This document shows, one piece after another, positions 48,471 to 52,873 of a DNA stretch of 64,000 nucleotides; position 1 is the stretch's first letter; the number at the start of each line of letters is the position of its first letter. The notes below the pieces were generated by a model. That model did not search any database. It worked only from the letters and a program-made list of their open reading frames with translations, and was not told the origin of the DNA. The stretch spans positions 40,442-104,441 of the forward strand of contig JAADVB010000036.1 in assembly GCA_023334545.1 (NCBI GenBank), read 5' to 3'. Made by a program: the position numbers and the translations under genes. Origin of the DNA: Salisapilia sapeloensis CBS 127946 (taxonomy: Eukaryota; Protista; Oomycota).

Positions 48471-49541
48471 CTACGCATCGACCTGTAGACTCCAAGACTC
48501 TCTGTCGATATGGAACTTGTCGATCTGACCTTGAAATACACCGGCTAAGAACGTATTACTACTGGCGTTGCAGACACCAATATAGGAGGCACTGGGACCG
48601 GAGTGTGGATTCTGGAAGACACATGGTGCGTTCGACTGCTGCATATCCCAGACCTTGACCGTTCCATCTTTCGATACCGAAGCAATCAGTTGATTTGACT
48701 GCTTATCGCCGTCTAAGAAGCAGCAGCCAGTGGCATCCTGTCGATGACCCTCGAACTCGATGACCTGTGCATTCTTTCGACGATCCCAAACGCGGACTTC
48801 ACCTCCGACTCCGTTGAACCCTTTGCTCGAAGTCACAACGTACATCCCATCGGTGGAGACATCGAGGCTTAGAGGAAAGTAGACGTAACCTCGAAAGACT
48901 TGAGATGGCGGGCAATGGCTTTGTCTATCATCCCAGATCTTGACTGTCAAATCTTCACTCCCTTGTACTACGAGAGATGGCTCATGAGTAACCCACTTTG
49001 CACACGTGACGACGTTCTGGGAAATTGTCTGACTAGCTTTCACTTGTGCCGTCGCCAAGTTCCACCATACTACCTTTGTATCTCGACCTCCAGACCACAG
49101 CGTTTGCTCATTCGCATCTACTGCGATGGCAGATACATTGAGTGAATGCTGACGTAGGAAGACACTCGAGTGGGTTTCGCTATCAATGTCCTTTGTAATG
49201 GCAATCGTAGTGTCTCGAGAACAAGAGTACACTCGTGTGCTAGTAGGACTGATAATTATATCATTTACAGATTTTGCATGTATCTTGTATGCTTGTTTAT
49301 TGTCTCTACTTTCCCAACGGAAGCGTTGAATACTACCATCTTCCCATCCAGCGAAGCAGTCTCGATTCTTCGGCTCAAAGCCAATACAACCGAGTACAGT
49401 ATCTTCATCAAAAGACCGTAACTGAACACTATCCTCTCGAATTTCTCCACCATCTTTACTCTGATCATCAGCTTTCCATCTGTCTAGACTAGCACCAGCA
49501 GCATGTCGCGAAGCAGAAGCCTTGGAGCTGCAGGTTCCCAT
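48471..49541 (-). CDS. WDR31: WD40-repeat protein WDR31-like, predicted N-myristoylated
   Basis: MGTCSSK N-terminus. Repeats WSGGRD..., NVVT...W, GSEDLTVKIWD, TSSKGFNGVGGEVRVWDRR and EFEGH match the WDR31 pattern. Confidence 0.8.
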   Translation of the reverse strand: MGTCSSKASASRHAAGASLDRWKADDQSKDGGEIREDSVQLRSFDEDTVLGCIGFEPKNRDCFAGWEDGSIQRFRWESRDNKQAYKIHAKSVNDIIISPTSTRVYSCSRDTTIAITKDIDSETHSSVFLRQHSLNVSAIAVDANEQTLWSGGRDTKVVWWNLATAQVKASQTISQNVVTCAKWVTHEPSLVVQGSEDLTVKIWDDRQSHCPPSQVFRGYVYFPLSLDVSTDGMYVVTSSKGFNGVGGEVRVWDRRKNAQVIEFEGHRQDATGCCFLDGDKQSNQLIASVSKDGTVKVWDMQQSNAPCVFQNPHSGPSASYIGVCNASSNTFLAGVFQGQIDKFHIDRESWSLQVDA

Positions 49542-49614
49542 GAGCACTTCTAGCGTTTCAAGATCTCCAGTACCGTTCGCGTATATCATGTAAAAGACAA
49601 CAACAAGCTATCAC

Positions 49615-51672
49615 ATGGATCGGCAGGAGCTCCCAGCAGGCTGGTTGATCCGAGTATCTCGGTCCAAGAGCAAAGTCTACTACTACAATACCACTTCAGG
49701 AGAGACACAATGGACGAGACCAACTTCTCCAGCAGAAAGAAGTAGTAAAAAACAAAAGACAGTCGTAGAGAGTGAATCAAAGGACGAAGACCAAAGCAAA
49801 GCCTTTGCATCCATGCGTGTAGGTGGATCAGTCAAGTCTGCTTCCAGTCTATTCACGCCATGGGAGCATCAGGTCAATGCAGTCTCGAATATTATTAAAA
49901 ATGTCCGGCAAGTTTCCACTACACAGCATCAGAAATACCTTCTCCAGCATAGCACTGGATCCGGCAAAAGTATCGTCATGGCAGCTTTAGCACACCAACT
50001 CTTGTACGTGGTAGACGATAGCAACCATCGTTTTCACACTGTCATCCTCCTCTTCGACCGTATCAAGCTAGACGATCAAGTCGGGTCCACCGTCGAGCGC
50101 TTCCTCCAGCGTAATGGCGTGAACGAAGTCTTTCGAGCCGACTCTGCTCGCCACTTTGCCTCGTTAATCGAAGCAGATACCTCTTCTACTACTCCAAAGC
50201 AGCGTGTTATCATCACTACCATCCAAAAGCTAGCTACTCTCGTCCAGGACGCAGTGGCGCTCACTCGTCTCTTCCACCATACCACGAACTCCGATGACGC
50301 CTCTAGCTTCGACCGCACGGCCATCCTGACAGATGAAGCCCATCGGTCTCACTCCAAGACCACGAGAGAAGCGATAGAAACGGTGATGCAAGCAGGATCC
50401 AACGCGAAATTGACGTTCGTAGGGTTCACAGCGACTCCGAATGCTGCGTCGTTAGAGCTCTTCGGGACAGAAGAAGACGGATGGCTGCATCCGTTCGACT
50501 GCTATTCCATGTCCCAAGCAGTCCAGGATAAACGTATACTCAACGTCCTACAGAACTACTCTTGTGTCCACTGCCATGTCGAAACGAACCTCCCATCAAA
50601 CGTTCGAGCTAGTCTACAGCAAAAGCATCTACTACGAAAGGTGATGGACGTAGCTAGCGAACTAGACACTTGTCTTAAGGCCAAGACGCTGTACATGATG
50701 GAGGACTATGCCCAGACAAAGGCTCTACACAGTCGACTTAAAGTAGTTCTCTCCCTCCTCTTCTCCATTTATATACTCATGTAGATACTGATAGTGCATG
50801 GTCGTCGCACGCAGCCGTCGAGACGTCCTTCGCTACTATAACTTCATCTGTCGCTTCCTACAGAACAAGTACACTAGCATCCTACCTAGCTCTACGTCCA
50901 TCTAACGTCTCGAATCGATAGAGGACACGACTACAAGGTCTATGCGTCCTTTAGTGGCTCGCAGCCATACGACACGTCTGATCTGAATGGCAAGAGTGTC
51001 ACGGAGCAGAGTTTGAATACATGTAGTCTCGCGTCGGCAGACGTTGTCGTTGTTTGTGATAAGCTCGATACAGGATATAATGACCCTATGCTTGCCTCGA
51101 TGTACATTGATCGAGTGCTCAAGTCATCTACGCAGACAGTGCAGTTGCTAAGTCGACTTAATCGACCTGCAAAGGGGAAGACAGGTACCAAAGTGGTGGA
51201 CTTTGCCAACCATGTGGCTTCCATCCGCATGCACTTTGCCAAGTACTGGGGGCACACGCGTATGCCATCCAGCGCTAGTGGACATTCGGATGAAACACGT
51301 AGACTAGAGGTGATTACAGGCTCGACTGTCGTGAATGACCAACTGCCTGCGCTTGCTGATGCAGCAACGCAAGAAGAGGTAGATGACCTCGTGCAAGACA
51401 CGATCGAACCATTGGAACGTGACCGCTTCCAACAAATCAAAGATGCATTGGACTTATGTCTAAATGCATGGGAGTTCGTACAAGATGCAGAGGACGTCAG
51501 CAACGTCCCGCGCGACCAGCTACGGATGCTAAGGAAGAGCATCAGCCGCGTGACAAGTGTCGACGACGACGATTTCCTCCAAGACATACTACCAAAACTA
51601 TCTAGTCGAGTACAGCATCGAGAGACTACATTCCATGGCAACATTGACCTCCACTCCCTTCTACACGACTAA
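49615..51672 (+). CDS. WW domain fused to type I restriction enzyme R-subunit (HsdR)-like SF2 ATPase/translocase, 3 exons
   Basis: WW: LPAGW...YYYN..SGETQW.RP. Motor motifs: QHSTGSGKS, TTIQKL, DEAH, FTATP, K|CMVVARSR, DKLDTGYN and VQLLSRLNR. Introns 50743..50794 and 50869..50921 restore one frame. Confidence 0.85.
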
Positions 51673-51847
51673 TCCACATCATCTACATCGCCATCGAGGC
51701 ATGCTCGTACCACTTCAACTCCATTTTCGCCGTAGATTTAGCTCCTTTCTTATTTTGGAAACGCTACAAGTCGATAGTTGTGAAATGTAAATTTAGCCTA
51801 TACCGAAATACTCGTTTACTCGACGGAACGAGAGAGCGAAGCGAAGG

Positions 51848-52873
51848 ATGGCGAGCTCCAACAGCGCCGTGAACGCCCCACGCGCTACGGATAGCACTGC
51901 TGCTACTGGGACATCTCCTCCAAAGCCATGGGAGCAACGGAGTGCAGCACAACGATCTAACAGCGCTTTGAACACTGGAAATACGTCTGTCGGTGGTCTC
52001 ACGCAGTCCACGGCCACGTCCGCTGGCGTCAATGCCAATGCATACAATACGCAGCAGACGCAATATATGCAGCAAACGGCAGATAACACGATGACTAGTC
52101 CATACAATACAAACACGTACGGCGGATATAATAGCGGGTACGGTGGATACAATAGCAGTATCGGAACACCAGGGTACACGAGTCCCATGACGTCGTACGG
52201 AGGCTATGGTGGAGGCTACGGAGGGAGCTATGGAGGCTACGGCGGCTACGGTGGCATGAGCTCCTTTGGCGGTGGATACGGCGGATTCGGTGGCATGGGT
52301 TACGGCGGCATGAACCGCTTCGGAATGGGCTCTGGCATGATGGGCGGCATGAACGGAGGCAATATGATGGACCCGAACGCTCCTTTCAGCTGGCTCAATA
52401 GCTTTAACCGTGTCATCGGCTCCATCGGACAGATCACAGAGGTACGACCTACTTGCCTTATATGTATATATATATATAGAACGCATCTAATGAGGAAGTA
52501 GATGCTAGGCATGAACGCCGAGGCACTCAACTATTGCGTCGGCAGCTTTATCAACTTTATGGAACGTCTCGGAGGCATGTTTGCGAACTTTGCAGCCATG
52601 CTATCTCCTCGTCCGGAGTTCCCGCCTGGGCATCCGAGGCATGGGGAACCACCTATGACAGAAGAAGAGGAGCAGAGTCGACGACGAAGAGTCCGGATCG
52701 TCCAGTTTTTACTTTCTATGGTCGCGCTTTCGGCAATGTACAAATTCGGTCGATGGATCGCGAGTTTACGAAAGGTCTCGAGACCGAGGATCATGGCGTC
52801 TCAATCGACAAACGTCCGGAATGACCTCGAACGCATCTTTCAGCACTCGACTGCACCGTCGAGTAGTAAATAA
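51848..52873 (+). CDS. PEX13: Peroxisomal membrane protein PEX13 (no SH3 domain)
   Basis: SPPKPWE motif, YG/GM-rich region, intron 52442..52501, and a C-terminal hydrophobic segment. Confidence 0.8.
52465..52478. repeat. (TA)7 microsatellite in PEX13 intron
   Basis: Direct reading of the sequence. Confidence 0.9.

What the first reader, a model, noticed from the sequence alone, without database searches (positions are those of the whole stretch)
49615..51672. Eukaryotic WW-domain fusion to a nuclease-less type I restriction (HsdR) motor
Seen: N-terminal WW domain, a short charged linker, then SF2 motifs in HsdR-specific wording: YLLQHSTGSGKS (I), FDRIKLDDQV (Ia), TTIQKL, DEAHRS (II), FTATP...LELFG...YSMSQAVQDKRILNVLQNY (III), K|CMVVARSR (IV), DKLDTGYN..L..MYID (V), VQLLSRLNR...K....VVDF (VI). 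Two ~52-nt spliceosomal introns and housekeeping neighbours argue against bacterial contamination. There is no room for the HsdR N-terminal PD-(D/E)xK nuclease, and no hsdM/hsdS nearby. Known: HsdR is the ATP-dependent dsDNA translocase of bacterial type I R-M systems; WW domains bind Pro-rich or pSer/pThr-Pro ligands such as the Pol II CTD. Inference: a horizontally acquired defence motor repurposed as a partner-recruited nuclear translocase. I know of no characterisation of such a protein.
Basis: partly seen in the sequence, partly recalled or inferred. Interest (0 to 1): 0.85.

Follow-up and report, generated by a model that had tools for sequence, protein, structure and literature searches.

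The report
Oomycete WW-domain protein with restriction-enzyme motor
This oomycete gene is expressed, spliced and conserved; it joins a Pin1-like phosphoprotein-binding WW domain to the DNA-pumping motor of a bacterial type I restriction enzyme that has lost its nuclease, and relatives in other eukaryotes carry RNA polymerase II-binding modules, which suggests an unstudied transcription-linked DNA motor.

Summary
A three-exon gene (49615-50742, 50795-50868, 50922-51672, + strand) encodes 650 aa. RNA-run contigs lack both introns (52 and 53 nt, GT..AG). The protein has three parts:
- a WW domain that aligns without gaps to the Pin1 WW domain, including its long phosphate-binding loop;
- a basic, NLS-like linker;
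- an SF2 motor whose best Pfam, NCBIfam, PDB-sequence and fold matches are all type I restriction HsdR.

There is no nuclease, and no hsdM or hsdS gene nearby.

Orthologs occur in both major oomycete branches, and the gene tree looks consistent with oomycete relationships as I know them. All helicase motifs are intact.

The motor belongs to a wider clade of nuclease-less eukaryotic HsdR-like proteins. This clade is sister to bacterial HsdRs that sit in real hsdM-hsdS-hsdR operons. It includes Amoebozoa, a green alga and marine metagenome sequences. The nearest relatives of the oomycete group carry TFIIS N-terminal and central domains in place of the WW domain.

My best reading is a domesticated dsDNA translocase tethered to elongating RNA polymerase II. 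The function is inferred, not shown.

Databases hold only automatic names, and I found no paper on it. The scan had not noted it on other DNA.

The parts
49615..50742 (+). Exon 1 (aa 1-376): WW domain, linker and the N-terminal RecA lobe of the motor
   Evidence: Continuous ORF. RNA contigs cover 49611/49614-50742. Pfam WW, PF18766 and ResIII.
49630..49722 (+). WW domain (aa 6-36), Pin1 type with the long loop 1 'SRSKSK'
   Evidence: Pfam WW 7.9e-10. Ungapped alignment to the Pin1 WW domain over query aa 2-37. NEDD4L WW domains need a one-residue gap in loop 1. Pin1 and Ess1 are the best full-length WW matches in the PDB.
49747..49758 (+). Basic patch KKQK (aa 45-48) in the acidic, Ser-rich linker; resembles a monopartite nuclear localisation signal
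   Evidence: A K-[KR]-x-[KR]-like patch sits at the same alignment position in the orthologs, with one invariant Lys. Nuclear targeting is an inference.
49813..49872 (+). Conserved pre-motor helix (MRVGGS) and Q-motif-like FTPWEHQ
   Evidence: Conserved among oomycete orthologs. Aligns with 'PYQ' of EcoR124I HsdR.
49945..49971 (+). Motif I / Walker A, QHSTGSGKS
   Evidence: Invariant in orthologs. Aligns with HTTGSGKT of EcoR124I HsdR.
50053..50082 (+). Motif Ia, FDRIKLDDQV
   Evidence: Aligns with VDRKDLDYQ of EcoR124I HsdR.
50215..50232 (+). Motif Ic, TTIQKL
   Evidence: Identical to TTIQKL of EcoR124I HsdR.
50332..50352 (+). Motif II / Walker B, DEAHRSH
   Evidence: Aligns with DECHRS of EcoR124I HsdR. 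D, E, H and R are invariant in orthologs.
50422..50466 (+). Motif III GFTATP and the conserved LELFG
   Evidence: Aligns with GFTGTP of EcoR124I HsdR.
50743..50794 (+). Intron 1 (52 nt, GT..TAG)
   Evidence: Skipped in RNA contigs of runs X1 and X3.
50795..50868 (+). Exon 2 (74 nt): start of the second RecA lobe, motif IV region CMVVARSR
   Evidence: RNA contigs. Conserved KCM[VI]V.RSR in orthologs.
50869..50921 (+). Intron 2 (53 nt, GT..TAG)
   Evidence: Skipped in RNA contigs of X1 and X3 and in a contig of a related species, X5.
50922..51672 (+). Exon 3 (aa 401-650 and stop): rest of the second RecA lobe and a C-terminal helical region
   Evidence: Pfam T1R_D3-like 1.7e-7. TIGR00348 positions 598-668. 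RNA contigs.
51055..51165 (+). Motif V (CDKLDTGYNDP..MYIDR) and motif VI (QLLSRLNR)
   Evidence: Aligns with tGFDAPTL..VDK and QAFSRTNR of EcoR124I HsdR. Invariant in orthologs.
51193..51669 (+). C-terminal region of about 160 aa of unknown fold family (VVDFANH...PLERDRFQQ...)
   Evidence: No Pfam match. Helical with good confidence in the model of the Pythium ortholog. The profile match to the start of the bacterial HsdR C-terminal region (hhalign probability 92%) rests largely on the motor tail. It did not align to the EcoR124I helical domain.

Best explanation
The gene encodes a 650-aa nuclear protein. Its engine is the ATP-driven double-stranded-DNA translocase of a bacterial type I restriction enzyme (HsdR). 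The engine has lost the N-terminal nuclease and has no hsdM or hsdS gene beside it in this window.

In bacteria this motor works only while anchored to a DNA-bound partner, and it reels DNA past that anchor. Here the anchor is supplied by a Pin1-type WW domain, which recognises phospho-Ser/Thr-Pro motifs. The most likely ligand is the phosphorylated C-terminal repeat domain (CTD) of elongating RNA polymerase II. If so, the protein would pump DNA relative to the polymerase. It could push the polymerase, pull template through barriers, or clear obstacles, much as CSB/Rad26 or Mfd do.

Shown: the gene structure and expression, the domain identities, the HsdR ancestry, the loss of the nuclease, and conservation across oomycetes.

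Inferred: nuclear location, phospho-CTD binding, dsDNA translocation and the link to transcription.
For: Identity and reality of the gene:
- Both introns are spliced in RNA contigs.
- Pfam, NCBIfam, the PDB profile search, Foldseek and VIA-align all rank HsdR first.
- The motor aligns motif by motif with EcoR124I HsdR.

Ancestry:
- In a careful ML tree, 33 nuclease-less eukaryote-type sequences form one clade (support 93/82).
- That clade is sister to a bacterial HsdR group (100/97), and both are separated at 100/100 from more typical HsdRs.
- Members of the sister group sit in an hsdM-hsdS-hsdR operon or in a defence island next to an S subunit, and they keep the HSDR_N nuclease.

Selection:
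- All motifs are invariant from Saprolegnia to Phytophthora.
- The gene tree looks consistent with oomycete relationships as I know them; I did not compare it with a species tree.
- Of the 21 variants that fall in this gene among those one search listed for a sister species, 12 are synonymous and 9 are not. That gives pN/pS of about 0.23, and the replacements lie in loops and the linker.

Recruitment:
- The WW domain aligns without gaps to Pin1, including loop 1. The window has Arg13, Ser15, Arg16, Tyr22 and Trp33 at the positions of Pin1 Arg14, Ser16, Arg17, Tyr23 and Trp34.
- From my knowledge of the Pin1-CTD peptide structure 1F8A, Ser16, Arg17 and Tyr23 contact the phosphate, and Tyr23 and Trp34 clamp the proline.

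Link to transcription:
- The nearest non-oomycete relatives carry TFIIS N-terminal and TFIIS central domains: P0180, P0318 (Pleodorina) and P0315, and about ten marine metagenome clusters.
- The sister of the oomycete clade, P0031, is followed 19 nt downstream on the same strand by a TFIIS_N + TFIIS_M ORF.
- Another member carries a SURP module.
- A conserved basic patch in the linker resembles a nuclear localisation signal.
Against: - No experiment or interaction data exist.
- Pin1-type WW domains bind many pSer/pThr-Pro proteins, not only the CTD.
- The position matching Pin1 Arg17 is Ala in Aphanomyces invadans and Lys in Saprolegnia and in the unnamed early-branching sequence P0135.
- Amoebozoan members have no recognisable polymerase II module; they show only low-complexity, ARM or unassigned regions.
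- The conserved C-terminal region of about 160 aa is unassigned and could define a different partner.
- From my knowledge of type I enzymes, isolated HsdR is nearly inactive without its methyltransferase core, so activity here depends on an unknown loading mechanism.
- Structural similarity beyond HsdR is generic SF2: RadD, RIG-I and Brr2 score Z of about 16 against 18.7 for HsdR.
Confidence: 0.5

Rival explanations
1. The molecule is the same, but the WW domain docks it on a phosphoprotein other than polymerase II, such as a CDK- or MAPK-phosphorylated repair, replication or chromatin factor. It would then be a phospho-regulated DNA repair or fork-remodelling translocase.
For: Pin1-type WW domains bind pSer/pThr-Pro in general (my knowledge; similarity). 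Structural neighbours include the repair translocases RadD, FANCM and CSB. Amoebozoan relatives lack polymerase II modules.
Against: The closest relatives of the oomycete clade carry TFIIS N-terminal and central domains, which points specifically to polymerase II elongation complexes.
Confidence: 0.25
2. It still acts in genome defence. The nuclease-less motor works with an unlinked nuclease or silencing factor against viruses, transposons or foreign DNA. The WW domain serves only for assembly.
For: The ancestors are defence enzymes. Eukaryotes have repeatedly taken R-M components (PMC3417536).
Against: No nuclease, methyltransferase or specificity gene lies nearby. The family looks vertically inherited and strongly conserved, without the patchy, fast turnover usual for defence genes. 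The fusion partners are housekeeping transcription modules.
Confidence: 0.1
3. The motor has switched substrate and acts on RNA or RNA:DNA hybrids, as a co-transcriptional RNA or R-loop helicase, rather than translocating on dsDNA.
For: RIG-I, Brr2 and DEAD-box helicases are close structural neighbours. One relative carries a SURP splicing module.
Against: The motifs match HsdR nearly residue for residue, including TTIQKL and QxxSRxNR. That similarity is greater than to any RNA helicase: no RNA helicase reached E<=0.001 in the PDB profile search.
Confidence: 0.1
4. It is an artefact: bacterial contamination, a decaying relic of gene transfer, or an ordinary eukaryotic SF2 helicase misread as HsdR.
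For: None was found. The only hint is that the NCBIfam hsdR score is far below its cut-off, which the missing nuclease and C-terminal domains explain.
Against: The gene has spliced introns and is expressed. Its neighbours are eukaryotic. It carries a WW domain. Orthologs with intact motifs occur in both major oomycete branches. HsdR is the top hit by every method.
Confidence: 0.01

Closest known systems
HsdR, the R subunit of bacterial type I restriction-modification enzymes (EcoR124I HsdR, PDB 2W00/7BST; bacterial relatives P0310 and P0313)
   Same: Two-lobe SF2 motor with the HsdR versions of motifs Q, I, Ia, Ic, II, III, V and VI. Pfam PF18766 and PF22679. Best fold match. Sister-group relationship in the tree.
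   Different: No PD-(D/E)xK nuclease. No recognisable C-terminal domain that contacts the methyltransferase. No hsdM or hsdS genes. It has introns, an N-terminal WW domain and an NLS-like linker. It scores far below the NCBIfam hsdR cut-off.
Pin1/Ess1 WW domain (group IV, binds pSer/pThr-Pro; Ess1 and Pin1 act on the polymerase II CTD)
   Same: Ungapped alignment that includes the extra-long loop 1 and the residues at the Pin1 phosphate- and proline-contact positions. Best PDB matches.
   Different: No prolyl isomerase domain follows. Loop 1 is more basic (SRSKSK). The position matching Arg17 varies in Saprolegniales. Ligand not tested.
Uncharacterised eukaryotic HsdR-like proteins fused to TFIIS N-terminal and central domains (Pleodorina starrii P0318, EukProt P0180, marine metagenome clusters P0315 and P0399-P0405)
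   Same: Same nuclease-less motor. Same clade (99/96) as the oomycete proteins.
   Different: The recruiting module is C-terminal TFIIS_N + TFIIS_M instead of an N-terminal WW domain.
Amoebozoan HsdR-like 'helicase domain-containing proteins' (dictyostelids, Entamoeba marina, Pelomyxa, Thecamoeba, Balamuthia)
   Same: Nuclease-less HsdR-type motor with the same diagnostic motifs. Same eukaryote-type clade.
   Different: A separate sub-clade (100/99). They have low-complexity N-termini, long unassigned C-termini, or ARM repeats in Balamuthia. No WW domain.
CSB/Rad26 and bacterial Mfd (translocases that bind RNA polymerase and push it)
   Same: The proposed way of working: an SF2 dsDNA translocase docked on a transcribing polymerase. 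CSB, RapA and Mfd appear among the fold matches.
   Different: Different SF2 families (Snf2 proper and RecG-like). There is no sequence-level relationship closer than the shared SF2 core. The analogy is functional only and is untested.
Strawberry Notch and HARP/SMARCAL1, eukaryotic ATPases traced to prokaryotic restriction-type systems
   Same: The same evolutionary theme: SF2 ATPases of selfish or defence systems transferred to eukaryotes and reused on chromatin (PMC3417536).
   Different: That review lists three transfers (classical SWI2/SNF2, Strawberry Notch, HARP-like). In the passages I searched it does not mention an HsdR-type transfer.

Membership tests
Type I restriction enzyme R subunit (HsdR) | SF2 motor of the HsdR type (PF18766 N-lobe and PF22679 C-lobe, HsdR motif wording) | tested here: met
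   Pfam 3.5e-30 and 1.7e-7. Motif-by-motif alignment to EcoR124I. EcoR124I HsdR was the only helicase in the PDB profile hits at E<=0.001; the other hits matched the WW domain.
Type I restriction enzyme R subunit (HsdR) | N-terminal PD-(D/E)xK nuclease domain (PF04313 HSDR_N) | tested here: not met
   No Pfam hit. The motor core starts at about aa 77, after the WW domain and linker. The bacterial sister group keeps PF04313.
Type I restriction enzyme R subunit (HsdR) | C-terminal helical domain that docks on the HsdM/HsdS core (for example PF11867) | tested here: inconclusive
   No Pfam hit. hhalign probability 92% over about 100 columns, driven largely by the motor tail. VIA alignment to EcoR124I stops at chain residue 726.
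Type I restriction enzyme R subunit (HsdR) | Genetic linkage with hsdM and hsdS | tested here: not met
   Of the 10 large ORFs between 39.3 and 61.9 kb, the five with Pfam hits are eukaryotic genes, five matched nothing, and none hit N6_Mtase or Methylase_S. The rest of the genome could not be searched.
Type I restriction enzyme R subunit (HsdR) | Score above the curated NCBIfam TIGR00348 cut-off | tested here: not met
   76.4 and 36.4 bits for the two pieces, against a cut-off of 284.55.
Type I restriction enzyme R subunit (HsdR) | Phylogenetic placement inside the HsdR radiation | tested here: met
   The eukaryote-type clade is sister to operon-encoded bacterial HsdRs. The two together are separated from more typical HsdRs at 100/100.
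Group IV (Pin1-type) WW domain | WW fold signature (two Trp, C-terminal Pro) | tested here: met
   Pfam WW 7.9e-10 over all 31 profile positions. W10, W33 and P36 are present, and their counterparts are invariant in the ortholog alignment.
Group IV (Pin1-type) WW domain | Long loop 1 with Ser and Arg at the Pin1 phosphate-binding positions, and the aromatic pair at the Pin1 proline-clamp positions | tested here: met
   Ungapped alignment to Pin1. Window R13, S15, R16, Y22 and W33 match Pin1 R14, S16, R17, Y23 and W34. NEDD4L WW domains need a gap in loop 1. The Arg17 position is not invariant across oomycetes.
Group IV (Pin1-type) WW domain | Binding of pSer/pThr-Pro peptides | not testable with these tools
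   Needs peptide binding assays.
Snf2 family proper (SWI2/SNF2 chromatin remodellers, PF00176) | Match to SNF2-rel_dom with Snf2-specific insertions | tested here: not met
   PF00176 is absent from the Pfam hits at E<=1. 'SWI2_SNF2' is only the Pfam name of PF18766, which covers the HsdR motor.
Polymerase-coupled translocases (a functional class: CSB/Rad26, Mfd) | A module that binds RNA polymerase, joined to a dsDNA translocase | tested here: inconclusive
   Pin1-like WW domain here. TFIIS N-terminal and central domains in the nearest relatives. No binding data.

The most novel reading that the evidence does not exclude
A further, previously undescribed domestication of a restriction-enzyme motor. 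Nuclease-less HsdR translocases entered eukaryotes once or a few times and became RNA polymerase II-tethered DNA pumps. They are docked through a Pin1-type WW domain in oomycetes and through TFIIS domains in green algae and marine picoeukaryotes. This would make them a lineage-restricted counterpart of CSB/Mfd-type transcription-coupled translocases.
Probability: 0.35. Interest if true: 0.8.

Novelty: new variant of a known kind. Interest (0 to 1): 0.62.

Why it matters
Type I restriction motors are among the strongest and best-understood dsDNA translocases, but they are known only as parts of bacterial defence complexes. A conserved eukaryotic version that has lost the nuclease and gained modules that bind polymerase II or phosphoproteins would add an independent case to the short list of restriction-derived ATPases reused on eukaryotic chromatin.

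It would also point to a transcription-linked DNA-pumping activity in oomycetes, Amoebozoa and green algae. I saw no animal, fungal or land-plant member among the hits listed, although I did not search for one specifically.

Oomycetes include major crop and fish pathogens. A conserved nuclear enzyme that may be missing from their hosts is of practical interest as a research target. The domain architectures give a sharp, cheap hypothesis to test: phospho-CTD binding and dsDNA-stimulated ATPase.

Tried and rejected
- **Literature.** The terms paired HsdR with oomycete, with eukaryotes and WW domain, and with TFIIS; 'type I restriction' with Entamoeba and with Phytophthora; HsdR, chromatin and Aravind; and the locus tag PITG_06656. 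Most hits were E. coli strain genotypes. The review PMC3417536 covers restriction-derived SWI2/SNF2 ATPases, but the passages I searched do not mention an HsdR type.
- **Single-sequence PDB search.** phmmer of exon 1 found only WW domains. A profile of orthologs was needed to reach EcoR124I.
- **C-terminal region.** I tried to assign it with Pfam at E<=1, with hhalign against bacterial, amoebozoan and TFIIS-type C-termini, and with structural alignment. All were inconclusive.
- **Giant-virus origin of the marine TFIIS-type contigs.** I considered it. The gene content (a Ras GTPase, few Pfam hits) does not decide it, so I left it open.
- **Contamination, pseudogene or ordinary helicase.** All rejected; see the rival explanations.
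- **Earlier notes of this scan.** A search for HsdR or HsdM in this genome found none. I could not search the genome itself for hsdM or hsdS.
- **Spliced protein.** The 650-aa spliced protein could not be handed to the search or structure tools as one reference. I searched the exons separately and modelled the Pythium oligandrum ortholog P0122 instead.
Full report
**1. What is in the sequence**

The + strand between 49615 and 51672 carries a three-exon gene: 49615-50742, 50795-50868 and 50922-51672. The coding sequence is 1953 nt and encodes 650 aa. The introns are 52 and 53 nt. Both start with GT and end with TAG.

Contigs from two small runs that the tool marks 'RNA?' (X1 and X3, the window's own organism, no differing letters) lack exactly these two stretches. 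They run unbroken from 49611/49614 to beyond the stop codon. A related species in other runs (contigs about 92-99% identical) shows the second junction as well. The WW domain and the first motor lobe lie in the same exon, so they cannot be on separate transcripts.

The large neighbouring ORFs that matched a Pfam family are eukaryotic: a multifunctional beta-oxidation enzyme, a thioredoxin-domain protein, a WD40 protein, an ankyrin protein and a P450. Five others matched nothing. None resembles a methyltransferase or specificity subunit.

**2. Domains**

Pfam finds the following:
- WW, aa 6-36, 7.9e-10
- PF18766, aa 85-324, 3.5e-30. Pfam names this family 'SWI2_SNF2', but it is the HsdR-type N-lobe.
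- ResIII
- T1R_D3-like in exon 3, 1.7e-7. This is the second lobe of type I R subunits.

NCBIfam's hsdR model matches both halves (model positions 245-485 and 598-668). The scores of 76 and 36 bits are far below its 284.55-bit cut-off, as expected for a protein that lacks the nuclease and the C-terminal parts. PF00176, the Snf2 family proper, is not hit.

A profile of nine oomycete orthologs finds EcoR124I HsdR as the only helicase in the PDB at E<=0.001 (2.7e-16). The printed alignment pairs the motifs as follows, window first and EcoR124I second:
- HQ / PYQ
- QHSTGSGKS / HTTGSGKT
- DRIKLDDQ / DRKDLDYQ
- TTIQKL / TTIQKL
- DEAHRS / DECHRS
- GFTATP / GFTGTP
- DTGYNDP..MYIDR / TGFDAPTL..VDK
- QLLSRLNR / QAFSRTNR

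An AlphaFold model of the Pythium oligandrum ortholog (pLDDT 75.9, pTM 0.71) has EcoR124I HsdR as its top 15 Foldseek matches (about 1e-14). EcoR124I is also its top VIA-align match (Z 18.7, model 72-683 against chain 210-726). Generic SF2 helicases follow closely at Z of about 16.

About 76 residues precede the motor core. The WW domain and an acidic, Ser-rich linker fill them, so no nuclease can be present.

The last 160 or so residues are conserved among oomycetes and are helical in the model. They match no Pfam family. Their relation to the HsdR helical domain is unresolved.

**3. The WW domain is of the Pin1 type**

The best full-length WW matches in the PDB are Pin1 and Ess1. The alignment to Pin1 has no gap across query residues 2-37. 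NEDD4L WW domains need a one-residue gap in loop 1.

The window has Arg13, Ser15, Arg16, Tyr22 and Trp33 at the positions of Pin1 Arg14, Ser16, Arg17, Tyr23 and Trp34. From my knowledge of the Pin1-CTD peptide complex (PDB 1F8A), Ser16, Arg17 and Tyr23 contact the phosphate of pSer-Pro, and Tyr23 and Trp34 clamp the proline.

Across oomycetes the pattern S-x-S-K-x-K in loop 1, both Trp residues and the Pro are invariant. The position matching Arg17 is Arg in the Peronosporalean sequences aligned, Ala in Aphanomyces invadans, and Lys in Saprolegnia and in the early-branching metagenome sequence P0135.

The linker contains a basic K-[KR]-x-[KR]-like patch at a conserved alignment position (KKQK here). 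It resembles a monopartite nuclear localisation signal. This is an inference.

**4. Distribution and ancestry**

Orthologs with the same WW + motor architecture occur in Phytophthora (many species), Peronospora, Bremia, Plasmopara, Hyaloperonospora, Peronosclerospora, Nothophytophthora, Pythium, Globisporangium, Lagenidium, Aphanomyces, Saprolegnia, Achlya and Thraustotheca. All carry automatic names: 'hypothetical', 'WW domain-containing', 'SWI2/SNF2 ATPase' or 'putative type I restriction enzyme'. The window's protein is at most about 54-56% identical to any of them.

The next-best hits are unexpected because they are also eukaryotic. They come from dictyostelids, Entamoeba marina, Pelomyxa, Thecamoeba, Pyxidicula and Balamuthia. 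There are also Pleodorina starrii, a EukProt entry and many marine metagenome proteins.

I built a careful ML tree of the motor core (62 sequences, 427 columns, LG+C20 PMSF). Its main results are:
- The 33 nuclease-less eukaryote-type sequences form one clade (UFBoot 93, SH-aLRT 82; recovered in 92% of bootstrap trees).
- That clade is sister to a bacterial group (100/97).
- The two together are separated at 100/100 from more typical HsdRs.

The bacterial sister group keeps the HSDR_N nuclease. It includes a gene inside an hsdM-hsdS-hsdR operon and one in a defence island next to an S subunit and GmrSD.

Inside the eukaryotic clade there is an amoebozoan sub-clade (100/99). A second sub-clade (99/96) unites the oomycete WW proteins (100/99) with proteins that carry TFIIS N-terminal and central domains.

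Within oomycetes the branching order is an unnamed early-branching sequence, then Saprolegniales, then Lagenidium, then the window, then Pythium and Phytophthora. That looks like vertical descent, judged against oomycete relationships as I know them. I did not compare it with a species tree.

Not every metagenome member is proven to be eukaryotic.

**5. Selection**

All helicase motifs are invariant in nine orthologs that span the oomycetes. Of the 21 variants that fall in this gene among those one search listed for a sister species, 12 are synonymous and 9 are not. This gives pN/pS of about 0.23, and the replacements fall in the linker and in variable loops. The list is partial, because 17 further differences were not shown. 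The gene is expressed and correctly spliced.

**6. What it probably does**

From my knowledge of type I enzymes, HsdR translocates dsDNA only while docked on a DNA-bound methyltransferase core, and it reels DNA into loops. This protein has lost that docking context and has gained a module that binds phosphoproteins.

The strongest clue to the partner comes from its relatives:
- P0180, Pleodorina P0318 and P0315 carry TFIIS_N (Med26-type) and TFIIS_M domains after the same motor. About ten marine clusters carry the same domains by precomputed Pfam annotation.
- The sister of the oomycete clade, P0031, is followed 19 nt downstream by an ORF with TFIIS_N + TFIIS_M. This is probably one gene that was split when genes were called.
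- Another member ends in a SURP module.

TFIIS domains and Pin1/Ess1-type WW domains both bind the RNA polymerase II elongation machinery. I therefore read the protein as a dsDNA translocase tethered to elongating polymerase II through the phosphorylated CTD, working in a way analogous to CSB/Rad26 or Mfd.

The step from architecture to function is an inference. Amoebozoan members show no such module, and Pin1-type WW domains have many ligands.

**7. Comparison with what is known**

The motor is HsdR-derived, but the protein is not a type I R subunit. It lacks the nuclease, the gene linkage and a full-length family score. It is also not a Snf2-family remodeller.

The evolutionary theme is established: restriction-system SF2 ATPases have been reused in eukaryotes. 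The review PMC3417536 counts three transfers (classical SWI2/SNF2, Strawberry Notch, HARP-like). The passages I searched do not mention an HsdR-type one. I found no paper on this family in seven full-text searches.

I therefore rate it as a new variant of a known kind. The proteins are on record under automatic names, but the family, its architectures and its probable link to polymerase II appear to be undescribed.

**8. Verdict**

Two corrections apply: the acquisition is ancient and shared well beyond this genome, and the function is still a hypothesis.

- Confidence in the identity and ancestry: about 0.95.
- Confidence in the polymerase II-coupled translocase mechanism: about 0.5.
- Interest: 0.62.

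Noticed in passing
window 49540-49614: The WD40 gene on the minus strand and the WW-HsdR gene lie head to head. RNA contigs of the WD40 gene stop at 49540/49544, so its real start is probably the second Met (MGTCSSK..., at about 49541) and not the ORF's first ATG at 49589. MGxxxS resembles an N-myristoylation signal. About 70 bp then separate the two start codons, and no RNA contig covers them.
   Followed up: partly
window 49611-49615 and 49813: The RNA contigs of the WW-HsdR gene begin only 1-4 nt before its ATG. Either the 5' leader is extremely short or the assembly is truncated. The next in-frame Met is codon 67 (MRVGGS), just after the WW domain and linker, so leaky scanning could give a WW-less isoform. 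Aphanomyces invadans has an annotated variant named without the WW domain (P0264, 600 aa).
   Followed up: no
window 51673-52400: The same RNA contigs continue without a break from the WW-HsdR stop codon into the next + strand gene, which starts at 51848 and encodes a Gly/Tyr-rich protein with no Pfam hit. The intergenic gap is only about 175 bp. A contig across two genes does not prove one transcript.
   Followed up: no
proteins P0121, P0125, P0127 and about 40 others: The WW part of the query hits very long proteins (1,000-3,700 aa) with up to 27 tandem WW-like stretches of the same subtype. Their organisms were not looked up.
   Followed up: no
P0315, residues about 1020-1069 (alignment A3): The marine TFIIS-type HsdR-like proteins end in a Cys-rich CxxC...CxxC segment with only a faint Zn_ribbon_TFIIS hit (E 0.032). 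By eye it lacks the acidic hairpin that full TFIIS uses for transcript cleavage. This may be a TFIIS-like anchor without that activity.
   Followed up: partly
P0306 (Thraustotheca clavata) and P0307 (Achlya hypogyna): In these Saprolegnian annotations the WW-HsdR protein is joined to uDENN/DENN domains in models of about 1,650 aa, with the motor core starting near residue 1,064-1,099. These are probably merged gene models rather than real fusions.
   Followed up: no
L004 and L005 (marine metagenome contigs): The contigs carrying the TFIIS-type HsdR-like gene are gene-dense, have few Pfam hits and include a Ras-family GTPase. Whether they come from a picoeukaryote or a giant virus was not decided.
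   Followed up: partly
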